A stretch of DNA of 63,997 bases, the filler included, from Octopus bimaculoides (taxonomy: Eukaryota): assembly GCF_001194135.2 (NCBI RefSeq). It is 5 parts of 4 records of this genome, joined end to end, with 100 filler letters (N's around TTAATTAATTAA, not from the genome) between each part and the next. Parts side by side here need not be neighbours in the genome. Positions count along the whole stretch, not along the records: positions 31,938 to 52,773 come from NC_068990.1; 4 more parts are not named here. The stretch is one strand, 5' to 3'. Shown piece after piece: positions 33,986-50,429 of this stretch (positions are counted from its first letter, which is position 1; each line of letters begins with the position of its first letter). Made by a program: the position numbers and the translations under genes. The notes beneath the pieces were generated by a model. The model saw nothing but the letters and a program-made list of their open reading frames with translations. It made no database searches and was not told the origin of the DNA.

Positions 33986-34390
33986 GCAGTGTGGCTGTGA
34001 GGTAAGAAGCTTGCTTCACAAGTACATGGTTCCAGGCTCAGTCCACTGCATGGCACCTTGGGTAAGTGTCTTCTACTATAGCCTCAGTGTGACCAAAGCC
34101 TTGTGAGTGGATTTTGTAGATGGAAACCCAAAGAAGCCTATATATATATATATATATATATATAAATATGTATATATTTGTGAGTGTGTCTCCCTCCCCC
34201 TATCGCTTGACAACTGACGTTGGTGTGTTTACGTCCCTGTAACTTACCAGCTTAGCAAAAAAGATTGATAGAATAAGTACTAGGCTTACAAAGAATAATT
34301 CCTGGGGGTCAATTTGTTTGACTAAAGGCAGTGCTCCAGCATGGCCACAGTCAAATGACTGAAACAAGTAAAAGAATAAAAGAATATATA
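33986..34390 (+). mobile_element. Composite CORE-like SINE-B, full structure
   Basis: tRNA-like head (GTGGCTGTGAGGTAAGAAGC...GGCTCAGTCC), CORE-like TGGCACCTTGGGTAAGTGTCTTCTACTATAGCCTC, internal (AT)n at 34138-34170, a conserved 3' half, and a TAAAAGAA tail. Confidence 0.9.
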
Positions 34391-35643
34391 TTATATAATA
34401 TAATATATAAATGATTACTTGTAGGGACACAATATTTTGTTATGTGACCATAATATGCTACCAAGTATATTAAAGGCTTTATATGTCAGTACTGTATCCT
34501 ATTATGTTACCATATATATATATATATATATATATATGCTAAAGTGTAGGAATGAAATTTTCTTAGGGGATGTTAATCCAGATTTTCAGGTGGATATTTA
34601 AAGCATTTTCATTGCCCACCAAAAATTCTAGGGGTGCACTTGCACCTGCTGTTCCGATGCCTATGATATAAATATATGTACGTAAATATATATATAACTC
34701 AATCATCCAAACATAAAAATATACCAAATAATCAATGCAATGATAATGTAACTAGGAAGATGTCAGGCATAAAGATAGTAAAGCCCAGATATGCTCAGAA
34801 AGTAAACTGATAAATTTGCAGATAATTGTGAAGTTTTAATAAAAGTAACAAATGAACTTACCATATCTAAAAATCTTAAGAGTGAATATACAGCTAAAGA
34901 TAGAGTTAAAAACTAACAAAATAAATTATATGCACAATTCTAATAATAAGATTGAATCAAATGGCCACAACAAACTTAATACTAATATAAAATCTGACTT
35001 AAAAGGTAAGATAAAAAATATCATAATCTATTCTGATATATCTAAACCTGAATACTCAAGCAACACATCTTCAAGAAAACGCACAAGCAGTAATTATGGT
35101 ATAATTTGCATGAAAATTACTACAACCCATGAAAAATCAAAAATGTTAAAATGAGACAAAGGAATGTAACTTGATTTAACTCACAATAAGTGAAAAATTA
35201 TTAGGACTAATATATCTGAAGTTTTCATTTATACATTAAGCAGGAACTTTCTTCCAAACTAAAGATATCACTGCATTTTGAATAGGTACACAGTTAAATT
35301 CTCTTACTCTACAACACCAAATCTCACAAATATTATAAAATATTCTAACATCTGCAAATAAGTTTTATTAAAATAAGATACACACTAAAAATATCATAAA
35401 CACTTGAGTTAATATTTATCAATATGTATAACCCTAAATTTACATTCTGAATTCAAATTAGAGCAAGGTCAACTTTGCCTTTCATCTTTTTGGTGTAAAA
35501 AAATAAGTCACCCCTCTGAAATTGCTGGCTTTGTCCCAAAATTTGAAACCAATATGTATAGCCCTAAAATGGGTAACATTCAGAATGTAGAAAAACATTA
35601 ATACAAACTGACCAAATCATTAAGTCTTTTGTATTTTGTATTG

Positions 35644-36589: not shown

Positions 36590-36745
36590 CTGGCATTAGG
36601 AAGGGCATCCAGCTGTAGAAACTCTGCCAGATCAGATTGGAGCCTGGTGCAGCCTTCTGGCTTGCCAGTCCTCAGTCAAATCGTCCAACCCATGCTAGCA
36701 TGGAAAGCAGACGTTAAACGATGATGATGGTGATGATGATGATGT
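36590..36745 (+). mobile_element. SINE 3' module with (GAT)n tail
   Basis: AGGAAGGGCATCCAGCTGTAGAAACTCTGCC...CCCATGCTAGCATGGAAAGCAGACGTTAAACGATGATGAT, recognised from memory as a common cephalopod SINE 3' part. Confidence 0.6.
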
Positions 36746-38054: not shown

Positions 38055-38505
38055 TTAGCCCTTTAGCATTTAAACTAGCCATATCCAGCTCAAATATGCT
38101 ATCTGCTTTATGTTCAAGCAGTCAAAATCTGGCCTCTTACACCTACCCTACAATGTCATTCTAAAAATATACAATCACATCATTTAAATCTCAAAGTCAC
38201 AAGATAATGCATGATTAATCCTTTAGCATTTAAACTGGCCATATGAGGCTAAAATATTCTCCCTGTTTTATGTTTAAACCAGTCAGATTTGGTCTCTCAC
38301 ACCTACCCTACAATGTCAATCTAAAAATAAACAATCACTTCATCTAAATGTCACAGCTATAAGATGATGCATGATTAATACAAAATAACTGAATAATAAA
38401 GCATTTTAATGAACAGAATAATCTGAATGCTAAGAGGTTAATTCAAAACAATGCGAATTAATAAGTATTAAATTCCACAGAGCAATTTGAATGCTAAAGG
38501 GTTAA
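38055..38505. mobile_element. piggyBac-like MITE with a second copy nested in its internal TTAA
   Basis: Outer copy TTAG-CCCTTTAGCATT...ATGATTAA (38055-38218) plus 38442-38505 ending AATGCTAAAGGG-TTAA. Inner copy 38215-38441 reads TTAA-TCCTTTAGCATT...AATGCTAAGAGG-TTAA. Confidence 0.85.
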
Positions 38506-39844: not shown

Positions 39845-40226
39845 TTATGTTTGACTTTTGCTTTGCATTTGTACAAGTTGGATCCAAGTCTCACCCAGAG
39901 ACCTCAAGAGACAACATGTTAGAAGTTCATGTAGGTGTTATGCCTAGGGTACCATATATTTGGATTTGTACATAGTGTTGTTCTAGAGAATGTTTAAGAA
40001 ACCATAAGAAAATTATGTGTTTGCTTTAAAATTTGAGATCACATAGACAGTATTTTACGTAGGATATGGGCAGTTCCCATGAGCACTATCTTTTGAACTT
40101 CAGCCATTTTGGGGTTTCCTGGTATCTGAGCTAGGTAGTAATCAGCCCGTTTCGCTGTCATTCCCAGGGCACCTATGACAATAGGTATTGTTTTAGTCTT
40201 CAGGTTCCACATTTTGCTAATTTCTA
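39811..40226 (-). mobile_element. Second R4/Dong-like LINE family 3' end with 3' UTR and (AAT)n tail
   Basis: EISKMWNLKTKTIPIVIGALGMTAKRADYYLAQIPGNPKMAEVQKIVLMGTAHILRKILSM*. There is (AAT)n at both ends. Confidence 0.9.
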
Positions 40227-40788
40227 TATTATTATTATTAATACTATTGAATGAGAGAAAAGCACACACCATCGAAGTGATGTTAGGGTACAAATATACG
40301 AAGACCAATATACCCATCATGACTACCCGTCTGATAACGATACAGCAGGCACGTACACTATAACTATATGTGTGTGGCATGGTGACCTCCTATCAAGATA
40401 AACAGTGCATGACTTTGCAAATGGGGCGCCTAGTGAAAATTTTCTTCAGGTCAAGTTGCCCATTCCACTCAAAAGGACCCTGAATAAAGGTCAAGGATGA
40501 TGATTGAAACACACATCTCCAGGGGTGAATTATTCAAACCCCCAAAGAATCTCTCTCAACATACTACACCTACTCATGATCAGAGAGGTACATATCGCCA
40601 GCCACTTAAGGGCATGCTCAACTGGTTATGGTCAAGTGACAAGTAAATCTGTGGTATTGGGCAGAATACTTGCTGTAGTTCCTCTTTTACACCATGACAA
40701 AACATGTACATATTAACACTTCCAAGATCACAAGCCATCAGAACCACTGCCTGTTATTGCATAACTATTATTATTATTATTATTATTA

Positions 40789-41001
40789 AGGTGGTTAGCT
40801 TCCAAAATCAATAGCACACCAGGCAAAATGCTTAGCAGCATTTTGTCCATCTTCATGTTCTGAGTTCAAATTCTGCTGAGTTTGACTTTGCCTTTCATCC
40901 TTTCAAGGTCAATAAATTAAGTACCAGTGAAATACTAGGACTGATGTAATCAACTAGTCCCCTATCCCCAAATTTCAGGCCTTGTGCCTTTAATAGAAAG
41001 G

Positions 41002-41036
<35 letters not shown>

Positions 41037-41430
41037 GGCAGTGAACTGGCAGAATCCTTAGCATACCAGACGAAATGCCTAGCAGTATTTCCCAGTCACC
41101 ACGTTCTGAGCTCAAATTCCTCCGGGTTTAATTTTACCTTTCATCCTTTCAGGGTTAATAAAATAAGTACCAGTTGAACACTGGGGTCAATGTAATAGAC
41201 TCATCCCCTCCCCCAAAATTGCTGCCTTTGTGACAAAATTTGAAACTATTATTATTATTATTATTGTTATTAAGGCAGTGAGCTGGTAGAACTGCTAGCA
41301 CACCAAACAAAATGTTTAGTGGTATTTGATCCATCTACACTTATTTCATCGACCCCCCCAAAAGCATGAATGGCAAAATGAACAAAATGCTGCTAAACAT
41401 TCTCTCCAGCATGCTAATGATTCTGCCAGC
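40789..41430. mobile_element. SINE-A array: three + copies (40789, 41037, 41273) and one - copy (41335-41430)
   Basis: SINE-A motifs separated by (ATT)n tails. Confidence 0.85.
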
Positions 41431-42344: not shown

Positions 42345-43300
42345 AATGATTTCATTTATTTGCTACAAGGGCAAAGGATGAGTGGGACAATATAAAGACA
42401 GACATAAAGCGTGGGGGTTTACATATAATGAAATGATAAAAAAAATGGTAAGAAAGAAAGTATACATGGTATACACTGAAAAAGAAGAGCCATATGCACA
42501 GCATACAAAGATTTTTAAATAATTTTTTAAAAAGTGGCGGGGAAGGATGATATAGAGATGTGGCCCTCCTGATACAGGAAGGCCTCTAGGGATAATCAAA
42601 GAACCCAACTGCCTGCGATTTCCCTGAAAACCCAGGAGCAAGTGCCCTCTCCAATTCCTACCATCCACTCTTGCCATTTTCACAACTTTCACCCACCTTT
42701 CAATAAACTCACTCGAGGACAGCACTTCCCTCTCCACTCTCAATTTCCTTTTCAAGTGAGACTTGCAGAAGTCAATGAGAGCTCTACCAAAGAAGAATGT
42801 ATCTGTCCTCATGCCTTTCAGCTTTGTCCACCAAACAACATCTTTCACCACAGTCCCCAGGCAAATCAAAACTGCTTTGACTGCCCGATTGAAGGAGGGC
42901 AGTGGGGCAATCATTACTACTGACTCGGTCAACAGATGGATCTATCCAACATATGACAGCAGCTGTTCGACATAATCCCACAAGTCAGCAATGCCCGGAC
43001 ACTGAACAAGGGTGTGCAAAATGATTTCATCACTCTGCACGCACCTTGGACAAGCCTATCTGACAGCACATCCACGCCTGTAGAGTTTATCTCGAACCGG
43101 TAGCGCTCCCTCCCCCCAGAAGCACTGCCAGGCCAAGGACATCTGGAAATTATCTGGAAGTCCTCTGGAACAGACAAGCCAGTTCTTGTGAGTGCCCAGA
43201 GTCTCCCAAAAAATGTCGTTGCACTTCCCCGCCACTAATCCTCTATAAATTTCTAAAGCGGAACATCCATCAATCCCATTGCCCGACTGGTAGAGGGCTG
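42345..43300 (-). mobile_element. Tx1-clade (L1-like) LINE 3' end
   Basis: LAWQCF..ALPVRDKLYRRG...CPRCVQSDE..LHxLVQCPG (CCHC knuckle), ...VVKDVVWWTKLKG...SHLKRKLRVEREVLS...ERW, then a 3' UTR and an (ATC/ATT) tail. Confidence 0.85.
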
Positions 43301-44365
43301 GTTTCAGAATTAGGCACAAGACCAGCAATTTTGGGGAGGGTTAATTTGTTTACATTGACCCCAGTGCTCGACTGGTTCTTATTTTATAGACGTTGAAGAC
43401 CTCAAAGATAAAATTAACCTTGACAGAATTAATAATATTAATAATATTAATATAGGTTTTAAATTCTAGCACGAAACAGAATTAATAGTAATATAGCCAT
43501 CCTACTATGGAAGATTCATGAAATGCAAATTTTTAATAATTATAAGGACTTAGAAAAATTTCATCAAAAACTTATTCCCTATTATGAGAAGCTAAGAGGA
43601 ATCGGTGCAGCACAAATATTTTTGTACTGGACTAGTAGTAGTACTCTTGATCTTTTCAAACCCCATCCCTGATAGGGTTAGGTCAATGCAACTTATGTTC
43701 AAGTTGAGTTTCTACAGGATGTTTGCTGCATGTAAAACAGATAGTGAAGAAGTTACAAAGGTTATAGTTTTGAAAATTAAGAATGTGATACAGAGTTTCA
43801 GAAATGAGAAATCATAAGGTTGATGTGAGAAGAGGTGAGTAAATTGAATGAGGTTGCTTGAAGGTGGTATGCAACATGTTAGTTTAGAGAATCAATAGTC
43901 TTCATAAAAGAAACCTAAATGACAGTACTCAGTACTTTGGTGTTTAAGTAATTGTACTGTTGTACTGTTAGTGGTTGTATCAGTTTGACTGAGTTATTTC
44001 GGGCAGTTATGTGATCTAGAATGTTTACATGTAACAGATATTTCTAATACATAGTGTCATAGAGTGGAGAATACTACTACTTTGTATAGGATCATGTTTA
44101 TGTGATAGAAAATTTGTTGTGTTGGAAGATGTTTTTAAATGAATGAACTATCCTATATTTTTATAAGCTTTTCTCAAGTAAAATTTTTTCAAGATTCCTA
44201 ATGATGTTATTCTAAATTGAAAATTAGAACTAAAATACATTACAATTTATATTTATACAAACTGTTATCATGATTTTTATCTAAAATTATTACATAAAGA
44301 AGTTCTCTCGCTCATCTCCTTATAGGCATGATAGTTCATATTTGTTATGCTATACAAATTCTTAC

Positions 44366-46883
44366 CTTTGAATTTTCCCTTTGATCTGAAGAGATTTCTT
44401 TTGAGTAATTATGTTTTGTTGGAGATTCCTCTTCTTCAGAACTAGATGAATAAGATTCATCAACAGGAGTATATCGATTAGTATCTTTTGGTTTGTGCAA
44501 AATTCTAATTGGTAGACTAGTTAAATTTTCAATTTCCTTTTCTAATGATTCTATCTCAGCATCAGATTTCTGTTGCATGGTTTGTACTGCATCCATAACA
44601 CCTTCATCACAAATAGCATTTTTGTCATTAAAATATTCTCTTGGACTCACTTGCTCTAATGTGGAAGGCCTGATTTGGCTTTGAAATTCTTCTGCATCTT
44701 GAGGTGAGCTTTCTTGTGGTGATTGTAACTCTGAGTAACCCCTTTCATTATGGGGGGACATTTTACTAGATGGTACTTCAGCATTAGCTAAAGCTTCTAC
44801 TTCTTTCCTTTTCTTAATTTCTCCTTCATAAGAAGCCTCAATAGTGGCTGCCCCATAGAATGGCTTCTCTTTTTTTCCTATATCCAGAGTTGGTTCTTTA
44901 TTTGGCAGATTATGTTGAAAAACAGCTTGAGTCACTGATTTATCTTCATGCAATCGTTCTTCCAATGGTATGGTTTGTTCAGAAGATGTCTGGGATACTG
45001 ATTTACCTTCCTGGTTTTTCATATCCAGTCCCAGTTCTTCTTTTGGAATTCTTTCTTTGGCAGATGTCTGAGATACTTGTTGTTTGAAATCCAGTCCCAG
45101 CTCTTCCTTCAGAATACTTTCTTCACCAAATGACTGAGATTCTGGTTTATTTTCTTCTTGATTGAAATCCAGTCCCAGCTCTTCCTTCGGAATACTTTCT
45201 TCACCAAATGTNNNNNNNNNNNNNNNNNNNNNNNNNNNNNNNNNNNNNNNNNNNNNNNNNNNNNNNNNNNNNNNNNNNNNNNNNNNNNNNNNNNNNNNNN
45301 NNNNNNNNNNNNNNNNNNNNNNNNNNNNNNNNNNNNNNNNNNNNNNNNNNNNNNNNNNNNNNNNNNNNNNNNNNNNNNNNNNNNNNNNNNNNNNNNNNNN
45401 NNNNNTGATTGAAATCCAGTCCCAGCTCTTCCTTCGGAATACTTTCTTCACCAAATGTCTGAGATTCTGGTTTATTCTCTTCTTGATTGAAATCCAGTCC
45501 CAGCTCTTCTTTCAGAATACTTTCTTCACCAAATGTCTGAGATTCTTGTTTATTCTCTTCTTGATTGAAATCCAGTCTTGACTCTTCTTTCAGAATACTT
45601 CCTTCCGCAGATGTCTGAGATACTGGTTTATCCTCTTCTTGTTTGAAATTCAACTTTACATATTCCTGTGGGATAGTTTCTTCACCAAATGACTGAGATT
45701 CTGGTTTATTTTCTTCTTGAATGAAATCCAGTCTTAGCTCTTCCTTCGGAATACTTTCTTCAGCAGATGTCTGAGATACTGGTTTATCCTCTTCTTGTTT
45801 GAAATCCAGTCTCAGCTCTTCCTTCAGAATACTTTCTTCACCAAATGTCTGAGATTCTAGTTTATTTTCTTCTTGAATGAAATCTAGTCCCAGCTCTTCC
45901 TTCAGAATACTTTCTTCACCAAATGTCTGAGATTCTTGTTTATTTTCTTCTTGATTGAAATCCAGTCCTGGCTCTTCCTTCGACATACTTTCTTCAGCAG
46001 ATGTCTGGGATACTAGTTTATCTTCTTCTTGTTTTAAATTCAACTTTACATATTCCTGTGGGATAGTTTCTTCACCAAATGATTTTGGTTTATTTTCTTC
46101 TTGATTGAAATCTAGTCCTAGTTCTTTCTTTGCAATACTTTCTTCAGGAAATGTCTGATATACTATTTTATCTTCTTCTTGTTTGAAACCCAACTTTAGA
46201 TCTTCCTTTGGAATGTTCTCTTCAGCAAATGTCAACAACACTGGTTTATCTTCCTGTGGTTTGAAATCCAACCCTTGCTCTTCCTTTGGACTTGTTTCTC
46301 CATCAGATGTCTGTGATATTGGTTTGTCTTCCTGTTGGTTGAAATCCAGTGCCAGTCCTTTTTTTGGAATAATTTCTTGAAATGTTTCATATACTGTGTT
46401 AAATTCTTGTTTGAAATCCAGTTCCAATCCTTCCTTTGGAATGGTTTCTTCATTAAACGTCTGATACACTGGTTTATATTCCTGTTGTTCAAAATTCAAC
46501 CCTAGTTCTTTGTTTAGAATATTTTCTTCAGAAAATGTCTGATATACTGGTTCATCTTTCTGTTTGAAATTCAGCTCTGATTCTTCCTCTGGATCAATGT
46601 GCTTCAAAAGGGTCTGAAACATTGGTTCATCTCCATGTTTCAACTCTGGCAAGAATCTTTCCTTAGGACTATCATGTTCCACATTTGTTTGTGATCCATT
46701 TTTAAATCCAAGCTGCTCAAAACTTAACTCTGCCTCTTCACTTGAAATAGTTTGTGTAGGTAAAGCTTCAGAAACTGTTTTGGTTTCTATTTGACATGAT
46801 TCTGATTCAGTTTCGTCTTTTGGCAATTTCGTTTTAATATCTTCTTCAGATAAAATTGGTGTTTGATCATAGCTAAAGTCCAT
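44366..46883 (-). CDS. Large coding exon of an unidentified acidic, repeat-rich (likely disordered) protein
   Basis: ORFs 46883-45201 and 45454-44345 are continuous across an N gap. About 750+ stop-free codons in AT-rich DNA end at a consensus donor AAG|GTAAGA (44366/44365, phase 0). The 5' boundary is uncertain (in-frame stop near 46953). Confidence 0.85.
45000..46620 (-). repeat. Coding minisatellite: 78-bp (26-aa) unit FGEESILKEELGLDFNQEENKPESQT, ~20 copies
   Basis: Period of 78 bp (45406 versus 45484) and a higher-order period of 390 bp (45661 versus 46051). Confidence 0.95.
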
Positions 46884-48064
46884 TCTTATTGTTCTTATTA
46901 TGTTTATCAGTGTTATTGTCGTTGTTATTACAGAAAGTATGTGTATTTGTCTTTATGCGTACACTGATATTTACCTTAGCTTCTATCTCATTAATGGATT
47001 TACAATTTCTTAAATCAAACTTAAAGAAAAGTTGTTTATTTGTCAAAGAAATAAATTGAAGTATAATTAAATATACTAAGTTAGTTGAACTGCCTTAAAC
47101 AAAAAAACTTATCAGCCTGTGGAAGAATGTTGTAGTAGGTGTATGAAACCTGTCTCGGTCGATAAGTTACTTGTGACTTGAATCATTAATGACAAAAGTA
47201 TACTATAAGATTACTGTCATAACAGAGCAAGTTAAGCACGATCCCTTATTGATAACATACACTTTTCCTCTCTCTATGTCACTCTCTCTCCTCCCCCCTT
47301 TGCTTTCTTTCACTCTACTCCCACTCTCTCTCTCTATCTTGCTTTCTTTCACTATCTGTCTATCTTCTACATGAACTACTACTTTCTCAACTTTCTTTAG
47401 GTGACTCAATTATCAATTTGTCACATGGTTTTGACAATTCTCCCGCTTAACTTAGCTAAGATTATAGTAATAACATCAGTAGCTTCAGTACTATATTTTG
47501 TTATTTAATTTGGTTTACTGAGTTTCCAGCTCTTTAACCGAGAGGCCATCAAAGAAGAAAACAAAAAAAAACAATTACAAAATTAATCCAAGCCAAAAAC
47601 ATTTTATTATGCATGTACCTGTGTGTGTGAGTGTGTGCGTGCACGCGCATGCTTATACATACACATCTATCTATCTCTGCACACACACACACACACACAC
47701 ACACACNNNNNNNNNNNNNNNNNNNNNNNNNNNNNNNNNNNNNNNNNNNNNNNNNNNNNNNNNNNNNNNNNNNNNNNNNNNNNNNNNNNNNNNNNNNNNN
47801 NNNNNNNNNNNNNNNNNNNNNNNNNNNNNNNNNNNNNNNNNNNNNNNNNNNNNNNNNNNNNNNNNNNNNNNNNNNNNNNNNNNNNNNNNNNNNNNNNNNN
47901 NNNNNNNNNNNNNNNNNNNNNNNNNNNNNNNNNNNNNNNNNNNNNNNNNNNNNNNNNNNNNNNNNNNNNNNNNNNNNNNNNNNNNNNNNNNNNNNNNNNN
48001 NNNNNNNNNNNNNNNNNNNNNNNNNNNNNNNNNNNNNNNNNNNNNNNNNNNNNNNNNNNNNNNN

Positions 48065-48113
<49 letters not shown>

Positions 48114-48739
48114 GTATGTATGTAAAAAGAGAGAGAGTGAGAGTCTCACACAAATGCACACACACACATATACATATAGTCTCACTCTCTCTCTCACAGA
48201 CACTCATACACACAACTACATGGTTGAATTTTAAAATTTTAAGAAATATACAGTCAACTAGAGATTGTATATCAATTCCACTGTGCATCACCATGTCCTA
48301 TGCTTGGAAGCTTGTATTCATAAACATGCAAGTGAGTGTGTGTGTGTGTGTGTGACAAACTTACTGTAATGTAATTACTAGTTAACACCTAACCCAGTAA
48401 ATCGTGTGTGCCTCTCCATTTCTAATGAACCAATGCAAATAGTAAAGCAAAACTTTGATTAGACCCAATAAAATATAAAACTAAAAATAAACACAAAAAT
48501 AACATTAGGAGACAATAGAAACAATTAACACTAAACCCAGTCCCATACCAAACAACAAGAACAACAAAGGGAGATAACATTGATCTGGTGAAGTACATTA
48601 AGCTACACTCAAGAATAAACAAACAAACTGGAACATATAAACAAGAACATAAACGTCACAATAACAAAAATCTTATCAAAACAAACATATGCATCTTATC
48701 ACCAGCTACTCAACTAAAAGTCATCACACACACACACAC

Positions 48740-49186: not shown

Positions 49187-49532
49187 AGGAGGTTATGAGC
49201 GGTAGTGGTGTCAGTGAGACCCATAGATATCAGGTAATGCTGAGTTAGTGCTATGGATAGACCATAGTTAAGCTCCAGGTTCGGTGATTATGCGAATAAG
49301 GAGTCCAACATAGGTTGTATATCAGTGTGTGTGTATATAAAGATTTACTTTTCGTAATGAGATAAAAAAAACAAGGCTGTGTAGATTTTAGAACATTTAT
49401 AAATAGAAGGTTTTACAGCTGTTTCCAGGATATTTATTATATCCCTTCAACGGAGACAGTGTGAGAAGATGGTTAAGCAATAGTTAATTTAGATAAGATA
49501 AATTAACTATTACTTAACCATCTTCTCACACC

Positions 49533-49580
49533 GTCTCCAATGAAGGGATATAGTAAATATCCTGGAAACAGCTGTAAGAC
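49533..49580 (+). ncRNA. Hammerhead ribozyme motif with mutated core (CCAATGA)
   Basis: GTCT-CCAATGA-AGGGATAT-AGTAA-ATATCCTG-GAAAC-AGCT-GTA-AGAC. A third mutated copy (CCGTTGA) lies on the minus strand at ~49410-49457. Confidence 0.65.
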
Positions 49581-49705
49581 CTATTTATAAATGTTCTAAA
49601 ATCTACACAGCCTTGGTTTTTTATCTCATTACGAAAAGTAAATCCTATATATATATATATATAAAACCGAGGCTGTGTATAATATAGAACATTTATAAAT
49701 AGAAT

Positions 49706-49753
49706 GTCTTACAGCTGTTTCCAGGATATTTATTATATCCGTTCATCAGAGAT
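49706..49753 (-). ncRNA. Minimal type I hammerhead ribozyme, intact core
   Basis: The minus strand reads ATCT-CTGATGA-ACGGATAT-AATAA-ATATCCTG-GAAAC-AGCT-GTA-AGAC. This gives CUGAUGA and GAAA boxes, a stem II hairpin, a palindromic stem III (ACAGCTGT), a GUA cleavage triplet and stem I (TCT/AGA). Confidence 0.75.
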
Positions 49754-50429
49754 GGTGTGAGAAGATGGTTAAGTAATAGTTAGTTTAGTTAAGACAGGAA
49801 ATTGAGAGTGAATGTAGAGATATTGTATTTGTAAATCCATTGTTTAGGCAGAATGGTATACATATAAGATTCCAATACTTTGTGAGTAAAATCCAATTGT
49901 TTTTAAGATTGGTTGTTGCCTTTGTAAATCCATCATAATGCCTCTGCTTGATTTGCCAACTGCTTTCAAAGGTACTGGATATATTTTTCATCCTGCTTGT
50001 ACTGGTGAGGTCAAAGGTGTCACAGCCCCACCGCCTGATGATAGTATAGGAGAGAGAGAGTGGTGACCTTAGGTGTTACAGTATGATGGGAAGATCAGGT
50101 TTGTTGTTGTGAGAGGTTGGTAGTGGAGAGTGTAACAGGGGGTGAAAAGGACAAGGAGCATTTTCTCAAAGTAAAATTTATGGAAAGTGAATAGAAGAAA
50201 ATTTGGTGTGAGAGGACATGAGGAGAGCGAGTGAAGGTTACAAGAGTGCAGTTTCTTCCCTTCCCACTCAAGTATCATGATTTGGAAGGATAGAGGAAGG
50301 AGAAGAAATAGGATATGACTGATGGAGTTACAGAGGATTTAGAATGCATAGGCTGGAGAAGCAATGTTGAGAGATGGGAAGGTATAAAATAGGTGTGGAG
50401 GGAGCAGGATATTCAGTATGCACAGGTCA

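What the first reader, a model, noticed from the sequence alone, without database searches (positions are those of the whole stretch)
44366..46883. Giant acidic repeat exon of an unidentified, possibly lineage-specific protein
Seen: ~750-830 codons, E/Q/K/S-rich, with ~20 copies of a 26-aa unit that keeps periodic hydrophobics (F..EE.I.KEELGLDF.QEE.K). A non-repeat tail follows with a short coiled-coil-like stretch (DAEIESLEKEIENL) and an SSSSEEEESP phospho-acidic patch. I recognise no family. Inference: a disordered spacer exon, as in giant cytoskeletal, neuronal or sperm proteins. The rest of the gene lies towards lower coordinates and could not be found.
Basis: partly seen in the sequence, partly recalled or inferred. 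Interest (0 to 1): 0.7.

Follow-up and report, generated by a model that had tools for sequence, protein, structure and literature searches.

The report
Giant repeat first exon of octopus Rab32
The repeat-rich open reading frame is real, and it is an alternative first coding exon of the Octopus bimaculoides Rab32 gene that puts a roughly 800-1000-residue acidic, probably disordered arm of 26-residue repeats in front of an ordinary membrane-trafficking GTPase.

Summary
On the minus strand one frame is open from an ATG at 46883 to a phase-0 splice donor (AAG|GTAAGA) at 44366. It carries a 78-nt (26-aa) tandem array with at least 19 recognisable units, and the assembly gap lies inside that array.

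As written, the gap (194 N) shifts the frame by one. The repeat register needs 25+78n nt, which would restore the frame. The gap-free orthologous exons are open throughout: 845 codons in O. sinensis and 1028 in O. vulgaris.

The protein is not unidentified. The 219 residues before the donor are 100% identical to the N-terminus of XP_052827172.1, "Rab-32B isoform X3". Its GTPase exons lie 45.6 kb further down, outside the piece. Gene tables list products of 1059 aa (845+214) and 1242 aa (1028+214) in the two other species.

The arm has no Pfam, PDB or sequence relative outside Octopus. It is acidic (pI 4.2-4.6), gets low AlphaFold confidence and is weakly constrained (dN/dS 0.4-0.6).

Best reading: a lineage-specific "large Rab32" isoform whose arm displays many L-x-F-x-Q acidic motifs. 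The gene assignment is well supported; the mechanism is inferred. I rate it a new variant of a known kind, of modest interest.

The parts
46881..46883 (-). Initiator ATG of the long isoform, in the context aagaATGg
   Evidence: First ATG after an in-frame stop 24 codons upstream. The same ATG and context occur in O. sinensis and O. vulgaris, where the annotated genes start exactly there.
46617..46880 (-). Non-repeat N-terminal leader (residues 2-89; residue 1 is the initiator ATG listed separately)
   Evidence: Translation. About 90% identical to O. sinensis, with dN/dS 0.53 over codons 1-100.
45406..46616 (-). Repeat array upstream of the gap: 15-16 units of 26 aa, degenerate at the 5' end and regular at the 3' end
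   Evidence: TRF finds period 78 with 15 copies. Unit list.
45212..45405 (.). Assembly gap (194 N, estimated length) inside the repeat array
   Evidence: The repeat register requires 25+78n nt.
44951..45211 (-). Last three repeat units and the decaying end of the array. Includes Met 45022-45020, which NCBI isoform X3 uses as its start.
44366..44950 (-). Non-repeat tail of 195 residues
   Evidence: 100% identical to P0001 residues 25-219. 87-88% identical to the two other Octopus species.
44519..44605 (-). The only confidently predicted structural element: a 29-residue helix, EGVMDAVQTMQQKSDAEIESLEKEIENLT
   Evidence: AF2 model of P0001, helix 140-168, pLDDT about 68-79.
44423..44515 (-). Segment identical in O. 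bimaculoides and O. sinensis: LPIRILHKPKDTNRYTPVDE followed by the Ser/Glu patch SYSSSSEEEES
   Evidence: Alignment; coordinates.
44360..44365 (-). 5' splice donor GTAAGA. The exon ends ...TCA AAG| in phase 0.
   Evidence: Sequence. P0001 leaves the window exactly here and continues in exon 2, 45.6 kb downstream (ttttttcag|ACA TCT GGG). The same donor occurs in O. sinensis and O. vulgaris.

Best explanation
What it is (probability about 0.85-0.9). Window 46883-44366, minus strand, is one of three alternative first coding exons of the Octopus bimaculoides Rab32-family gene. It encodes at least 774 residues, and about 830-1030 once the gap is filled. These comprise an 89-residue leader, about 20-30 copies of an acidic 26-residue unit, and a 195-residue tail. 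It is spliced in phase 0 to five shared exons that encode a 214-residue Rab32/38-type GTPase ending in a di-cysteine (KKSCCR). The product is a 'large Rab32' of about 1000-1250 residues.

How it most likely works (inferred, probability about 0.3). The GTPase end would be prenylated and would cycle on and off organelle membranes like any Rab32. The N-terminal arm would project into the cytosol as a long, flexible polyanion. It has about 35% charged residues and a net charge of about -0.14 per residue. It would display about 20-30 copies of a short hydrophobic-acidic motif (E-E-L-G-L-D-F-x-Q-E-E, invariant core L-x-F-x-Q), so that many weak contacts with a partner, or with itself, add up by avidity. 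The tail would add one amphipathic helix and a Ser/Glu cluster that resembles a casein-kinase-2 site cluster.

The choice of first exon would then decide whether a cell makes plain Rab32 (222 aa), a medium form (464 or 478 aa) or this giant form.
For: Shown:
- One frame of six is open on both sides of the gap.
- Residues 1-219 of XP_052827172.1 (P0001) match 45022-44366 at 100%. The match leaves the window at the GTAAGA donor and resumes at a strong acceptor 45.6 kb downstream.
- The GTPase part is closest to human Rab32 (E 1e-93) and Rab38 (1e-90), well ahead of Rab29 (1e-61) and Rab7 (1e-37). It carries WDIAGQE.
- The gap-free orthologous exons in O. sinensis (845 codons) and O. vulgaris (1028 codons) are open from the same ATG to the same donor. 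The annotated products there are 1059 = 845+214 and 1242 = 1028+214 residues.
- Exon nucleotide identity between O. bimaculoides and O. sinensis is 94.5%, with no indel in 478 aligned codons. The flanking non-coding DNA is 87-91% identical with 25-83 gap positions. dN/dS is 0.41 and 0.60 (Fisher p = 0.005 against neutrality).
- Two other first exons exist, for X1/X2 and for the short form.
- Long and short Rab32 isoforms on the same contig are common in insects. Of 121 Rab32-like hits, 62 have more than 150 residues before the P-loop.

For the mechanism:
- L15, F17 and Q19 are kept in 14-15 of 15 units, including the old diverged units.
- Composition and AF2 point to disorder.
- Precedents exist. 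The FAM21 tail has 21 acidic Leu/Phe motifs that act by multivalency (PMC3374753). The E/K-rich N-terminus of Entamoeba RabD2 drives self-association (PMC12522834).
Against: - I saw no transcript or peptide evidence. The join to the Rab exons rests on one predicted NCBI model, plus the arithmetic of product lengths in two other annotations whose sequences I could not retrieve.
- The frame across the O. bimaculoides gap is not shown directly.
- Constraint is weak. Substitutions are spread almost evenly over codon positions (27/23/29), and dN/dS is 0.4-0.6.
- Copy number differs between close species (22 against 29 units), so the array is evolutionarily labile.
- The similarity among regular units may reflect recent duplication rather than selection.
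- No binding partner is known.
- The motif does not fit the LFa/aDLF patterns, and the LC8 TQT anchor occurs only once.
- The AF2 runs had no alignment for this region, so low confidence is only weak evidence of disorder.
Confidence: 0.7

Rival explanations
1. The giant isoform is made, but the repeat array has no specific binding function. It would be a labile, nearly neutral expansion of a tandem repeat in a little-used alternative first exon. At most it would act as a generic polyanionic spacer or steric brush on Rab32-positive membranes.
For: dN/dS is 0.4-0.6, and substitutions are almost flat across codon positions (27/23/29). Copy number is 22 units in O. sinensis and 29 in O. vulgaris, although those two species differ at only 3 of 1434 aligned unique sites. 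No relative was found outside Octopus. AF2 confidence is low.
Against: The frame has stayed open over 845-1028 codons in three species, with only in-frame length changes. The L-x-F-x-Q core and the Q-T-F/E-E/I positions persist in the oldest diverged units. The exon evolves at about half the rate of its flanks. The last 60 residues include a stretch of about 48 residues that is identical between O. bimaculoides and O. sinensis.
Confidence: 0.2
2. The exon belongs to an independent gene nested in the first intron of Rab32. The join to the Rab exons would be an artefact of gene prediction.
For: Older annotations split this locus into separate proteins: 'myb-like protein X' (303 aa) and Rab-32-like (222 aa). 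I saw no transcript data. The ORF would end 7 codons into the intron if it were not spliced.
Against: The ORF ends exactly at a consensus donor (CAAAG|GTAAGA) in phase 0, the phase the shared exon 2 needs. The X1/X2 first exon joins at the same point. The donor is conserved in three species. Three annotations give products that equal exon + 214 residues.
Confidence: 0.06
3. Translation starts at Met 45022, as in the NCBI X3 model (433 aa), and the repeat array upstream is untranslated leader.
For: This is the current RefSeq model for O. bimaculoides. As written, the frames on the two sides of the gap differ.
Against: The gap length is only an estimate, and the repeat register predicts an in-frame length. 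An untranslated leader would not keep 492 codons open in DNA that is 35% G+C, where the other frames carry 22-44 stops. In the gap-free O. sinensis and O. vulgaris assemblies the same frame is open from the upstream ATG, and the annotated CDS starts there.
Confidence: 0.04

Closest known systems
Rab32/Rab38 subfamily GTPases (human RAB32 and RAB38, Drosophila Rab32/lightoid), regulators of lysosome-related organelles
   Same: The downstream exons of the same gene encode a GTPase domain that matches human Rab32 at E 1e-93. It has the WDIAGQE switch II and C-terminal cysteines.
   Different: Canonical members are about 220-230 residues long. This isoform adds about 800-1000 N-terminal residues of acidic tandem repeats. 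The GTPase exons lie outside the window piece.
Long Rab32 isoforms annotated in insects (500-750 aa; named Rab-44, EFCAB4B or RASEF-like by automatic pipelines)
   Same: The architecture is the same. Alternative isoforms of one Rab32 gene exist, and some carry a long, low-complexity N-terminal extension directly in front of the P-loop.
   Different: There is no detectable sequence similarity between the extensions. The insect extensions are Ser/Lys/Pro-rich and not tandemly repeated. The octopus arm (845 and 1028 residues in the two gap-free species, at least 774 in O. bimaculoides) is longer than any of the 121 hits (maximum 549).
Vertebrate 'large Rab GTPases' Rab44, Rab45/RASEF and Rab46/CRACR2A (PMC8303950)
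   Same: A Rab domain sits at the C-terminus of a protein of about 700-1000 residues. Long and short isoforms come from one gene.
   Different: [quoted passage not shown] Here there is no EF-hand and only one 29-residue helix, and the Rab domain is Rab32-type.
FAM21 tail of the WASH complex: about 1100 disordered residues with 21 L-F-[D/E]3-10-L-F motifs that bind retromer by multivalency (PMC3374753, PMC11331091)
   Same: It is a long acidic disordered chain on endolysosomal machinery that carries about 20 copies of a Leu/Phe-plus-acidic short motif. It is the best model for how such an array can work.
   Different: The motifs differ. The octopus array has no LF dipeptide and no match to the LFa or aDLF patterns. 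The octopus units are a true tandem DNA repeat, whereas the FAM21 motifs are dispersed. There is no homology.
Entamoeba histolytica RabD2, a Rab with an N-terminal Glu/Lys-rich motif that mediates self-association (PMC12522834)
   Same: A charged low-complexity N-terminal extension is fused to a Rab domain.
   Different: It comes from an unrelated lineage and a different Rab subfamily. Its E/K tract is short, whereas the octopus arm is net acidic and has conserved hydrophobic positions.

Membership tests
Rab32/38 subfamily gene (the gene this exon belongs to) | The encoded protein contains a Ras/Rab GTPase domain | tested here: met
   P0001 carries PF00071. AF2 gives a Rab-like alternating beta/alpha fold for residues 226-406. 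The domain lies outside the window piece, at L001 56305-78963.
Rab32/38 subfamily gene (the gene this exon belongs to) | The GTPase domain is closer to Rab32/38 than to other Rabs | tested here: met
   PDB search: Rab32 1e-93, Rab38 1e-90, Rab29 1e-61, Rab7 1e-37.
Rab32/38 subfamily gene (the gene this exon belongs to) | Switch II reads WDIAGQE instead of the usual WDTAGQE (subfamily hallmark, recalled from memory) | tested here: met
   LWDIAGQERF is in P0001. It is invariant in 34 aligned Rab32-like proteins.
Rab32/38 subfamily gene (the gene this exon belongs to) | C-terminal cysteine motif for geranylgeranylation | tested here: inconclusive
   The protein ends KKSCCR, where relatives end CxC. 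Cysteines are present, but prenylation itself cannot be tested here.
Rab32/38 subfamily gene (the gene this exon belongs to) | This exon and the GTPase exons are joined in one mRNA | not testable with these tools
   The only evidence is indirect. One predicted model crosses the junction. The splice phases are compatible. Product lengths in two other annotations fit exon + 214 residues.
Large Rab GTPases (Rab44/45/46) | N-terminal EF-hand | tested here: not met
   Pfam finds no EF-hand or any other domain at E up to 1.
Large Rab GTPases (Rab44/45/46) | Extended coiled-coil domain | tested here: not met
   Only one 29-residue helix is predicted in the tail. The repeat part has no long helix.
FAM21-type LFa / aDLF repeat arrays | [L/I]F-[D/E]3-10-[L/I]F or acidic-D-[L/I]-F motifs | tested here: not met
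   Zero pattern matches and no LF or IF dipeptide in any of the three species.
Multivalent LC8 (DYNLL) clients | Several TQT-anchored 8-residue motifs in a disordered chain (PMC6607443) | tested here: not met
   One TQT. SQT occurs 11 times in O. bimaculoides and 19 times in O. vulgaris. SQT is a low-confidence variant anchor, and the flanking positions do not fit the stated preferences.
Insect long Rab32 isoforms | Sequence homology of the N-terminal extension | tested here: not met
   BLASTP and phmmer of the octopus exons against 125 retrieved proteins hit only P0001.

The most novel reading that the evidence does not exclude
The array is an octopod innovation. It would turn Rab32, the conserved master switch of pigment-granule and other lysosome-related organelles, into a multivalent scaffold. 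Its 20-30 L-x-F-x-Q acidic motifs would recruit many copies of one partner, or zip neighbouring molecules together, on one class of organelle such as the ommochrome granules of chromatophores or retina. The choice of first exon would then set organelle identity or packing.
Probability: 0.12. Interest if true: 0.6.

Novelty: new variant of a known kind. Interest (0 to 1): 0.35.

Why it matters
Rab32/38 control melanosomes, insect eye-pigment granules and other lysosome-related organelles. Cephalopods depend heavily on pigment organelles, yet no paper in the held library links Rab32 to cephalopods.

A roughly 100-kDa tandem-repeat arm fused to the GTPase shows that 'large Rabs' arise repeatedly through alternative first exons. 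That pattern is widely annotated in insects, but my searches of the held library found no study of it.

There is also a practical point. The RefSeq model for O. bimaculoides (433 aa) is probably truncated by the assembly gap and misses at least 555 residues.

Tried and rejected
- **Pfam** on both halves: only a sub-threshold chance hit, SUB1_ProdP9, at E 0.11.
- **PDB sequence search** on both halves: nothing at E up to 1.
- **Word-indexed search of 5.8e9 proteins:** the whole exon found only P0001, and the first 235 residues found nothing.
- **Full HMMER scan of 1.84e9 representatives** with the tail: only P0001. These libraries also failed to return the O. sinensis and O. vulgaris products that the gene tables list, so the negative result says little about other cephalopods.
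- **AF2 without an alignment** on the repeat part: mean pLDDT 35.5, with short low-confidence strands at each LGLDF. I do not interpret this as a fold.
- **Homology to other extensions:** none to the X1/X2 acidic first exon or to the insect extensions.
- **Motif patterns:** FAM21 LFa/aDLF patterns gave zero matches. An LC8 TQT array is not met. An LIR-like E-Y-V-x-L occurs in only 2-5 units, so I did not pursue it.
- **Other exons inside the piece:** neither the X1 micro-exon nor the short-isoform first exon is present.
- **Literature:** nothing on long Rab32 isoforms or on cephalopod Rab32. Ma et al. 2004 on lightoid is not held.
- **Satellite with a chance ORF:** rejected, because only one of six frames is open and the frame, ATG and donor are conserved in three species.

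Full report
**1. The observation**

The finding lies on the minus strand. From an ATG at 46883 the frame is open for 492 codons down to the assembly gap (45405-45212). A frame is open again for 282 codons from 45211 to 44366. The other five frames of the same stretches carry 11-44 stops each, in DNA that is 35% G+C.

Tandem Repeats Finder reports a 78-nt period, with 15 copies at 45406-46561 and 2.6 copies at 45023-45210. At the protein level there are 16 units before the gap and 3 after it. The consensus is QTFGEEsIPKEeLGLDFnQEENKpeS.

**2. The gap**

The gap sits inside the array. The sequence before it stops at ...GATTTCAATCA and the sequence after it resumes at ACATTTGGTGAA. At least 25 nt of one unit are therefore missing, and a true length of 25+78n nt would keep the frame. 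The 194 N as written shift the frame by one.

Continuity in this assembly is therefore inferred, not shown. I tested it in relatives (section 4).

**3. What gene it belongs to**

A search of 5.8 billion proteins with the whole exon returned one hit: XP_052827172.1, "ras-related protein Rab-32B isoform X3" of Octopus bimaculoides, 433 aa.

- Its residues 1-219 match window 45022-44366 at 100%. The match ends exactly at the donor AAG|GTAAGA.
- The contig is CM046610.1 of GCA_001194135.2.
- The remaining 214 residues are encoded by five exons. They start 45.6 kb downstream at a strong acceptor (ttttttcag|ACA TCT GGG, phase 0), which is outside the piece.
- That part matches human Rab32 (E 1e-93) and Rab38 (1e-90), far better than Rab29 or Rab7. 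It has the WDIAGQE switch II.

The X3 model starts at the first Met after the gap, which looks like a consequence of the gap.

The locus has two more first coding exons. An acidic exon further upstream, with an optional 14-residue micro-exon, gives X1 and X2 (478 and 464 aa). A short MTTDNFLE exon gives the plain 222-aa Rab32.

**4. Orthologues**

I fetched the locus around the X1/X2 first exon in two other species.

| Species (record) | Assembly gaps in locus | Orthologous exon | Codons | Repeat units | Annotated product |
|---|---|---|---|---|---|
| O. sinensis (CM016867.1) | none | L002 41391-43925 | 845 | 22 | 1059 = 845+214 |
| O. vulgaris (OX597823.1) | none | L003 44540-47623 | 1028 | 29 | 1242 = 1028+214 |

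Each orthologous exon is uninterrupted from the same ATG context to the same GTAAGA donor, and the annotated genes start at that ATG.

O. bimaculoides against O. sinensis:

- The first 235 and last 243 codons align without any indel at 94.5% nucleotide identity.
- The flanking non-coding DNA is 87-91% identical with many gaps.
- dN/dS is 0.41 for the first block and 0.60 for the last.

Constraint is real but weak. Substitutions are almost evenly spread over codon positions (27/23/29). The regular part of the array has a three-unit (78-aa) super-repeat. Unit number differs between species, though the counts depend on how well each assembly resolves the array.

**5. Nature of the encoded arm**

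- There is no Pfam domain and no PDB relative.
- No relative appears in 1.84 billion representative proteins other than the octopus protein itself.
- There is no similarity to the X1/X2 extension or to insect extensions.
- It is 21-26% acidic and 10-12% basic. pI is 4.2-4.6, and it lies on the disordered side of the charge-hydropathy boundary.
- AF2 gives mean pLDDT 35.5 for the repeat part. In the tail there is only one 29-residue helix, at window 44519-44605, with pLDDT 68-79.
- Within units, L15, F17 and Q19 are kept in 14-15 of 15 units, including the old degenerate units.
- The tail ends in a stretch identical between O. bimaculoides and O. sinensis. It reads LPIRILHKPKDTNRYTPVDE followed by SYSSSSEEEES.

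**6. Mechanism**

Shown: the exon is coding and conserved in the genus. It starts at an ATG and ends at a phase-0 donor that fits the Rab exons.

Inferred: it makes a giant Rab32 whose GTPase end is anchored to the membrane by prenylation (family knowledge). The N-terminal arm would be a flexible polyanion that presents 20-30 hydrophobic-acidic motifs for multivalent, avidity-driven binding or self-association.

Two precedents show how such arms can work. The FAM21 tail has 21 LFa motifs that bind retromer (PMC3374753, PMC11331091). The E/K-rich N-terminus of Entamoeba RabD2 drives self-association (PMC12522834). The octopus motif does not match the LFa/aDLF patterns, and the LC8 TQT anchor occurs only once, so no partner can be named.

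The main rival is that the array is a labile, nearly neutral expansion that acts at most as a charged spacer.

**7. Comparison and novelty**

Vertebrate large Rabs (Rab44/45/46) have EF-hands and coiled coils and belong to other subfamilies (PMC8303950), so membership is not met.

Long Rab32 isoforms are widely annotated in insects. Of 121 retrieved Rab32-like proteins, 62 have more than 150 residues before the P-loop, with a maximum of 549. Their extensions are unrelated in sequence and not tandemly repeated.

I found no paper on such isoforms or on Rab32 in cephalopods in the held library.

This is a new variant of a known kind: a lineage-specific tandem-repeat version of a long Rab32 isoform. 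It is already present as unnamed predictions in two octopus annotations, and it is truncated in the third by the gap.

**8. Limits**

- I had no transcript or proteomic data.
- The 1059-aa and 1242-aa products appear only as lengths in gene tables.
- The protein libraries did not return those two products, so the failure to find relatives in other cephalopods is not evidence of absence.

Noticed in passing
window 47707-48064: A second assembly gap (358 N), flanked by (CA)n at 47680-47706 and (TA)n at 48065-48121, lies only about 0.8 kb upstream of the ATG. The likely promoter and 5'UTR of this isoform are therefore partly unread.
   Followed up: no
window 49365-49787: A cluster of hairpin-forming inverted repeats, about 2.5 kb upstream of the ATG and resembling a small MITE-like element. 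The 84-nt arms at 49408-49491 and 49499-49582 are 93% complementary and 7 nt apart. Outer 42-nt arms are 98% complementary, and a third copy lies at 49706-49787.
   Followed up: partly
window 34195-34395 and 36591-36739; also 38060-38379 and 40766-41272: There are interspersed repeats in the 45.6-kb intron. The first two segments have 84-94% identical copies at several other places in the same 89-kb locus. The other two are local duplications of 160 bp and 246 bp.
   Followed up: no
L001 (O. bimaculoides) 44246-44281; L002 10001-10762 and 36117-36251: The Rab32 locus has three alternative first coding exons. In O. sinensis and O. vulgaris the X1/X2 first exon is annotated as a separate gene ('cilia- and flagella-associated protein 251-like', 'hypothetical protein'), which is probably a split gene model.
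   Followed up: partly
window 45002-45022: The RefSeq isoform X3 (433 aa) starts at the first Met after the assembly gap. It is probably an N-terminally truncated model that misses at least 555 residues.
   Followed up: yes
protein libraries against gene tables: The O. sinensis 1059-aa and O. vulgaris 1242-aa products are listed in the gene tables. None of the protein searches returned them, although they should have been top hits. Those libraries evidently do not hold them.
   Followed up: no
window 40039-40380 (-) and 42363-42932 (-): Two intronic ORFs of 113 and 189 aa have no Pfam hit. The first ends in a sequence (IPIVIGALGMTAKR...LMGTAHILRKIL) that I recall from memory as typical of invertebrate retroelement fragments. 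I did not verify this.
   Followed up: partly
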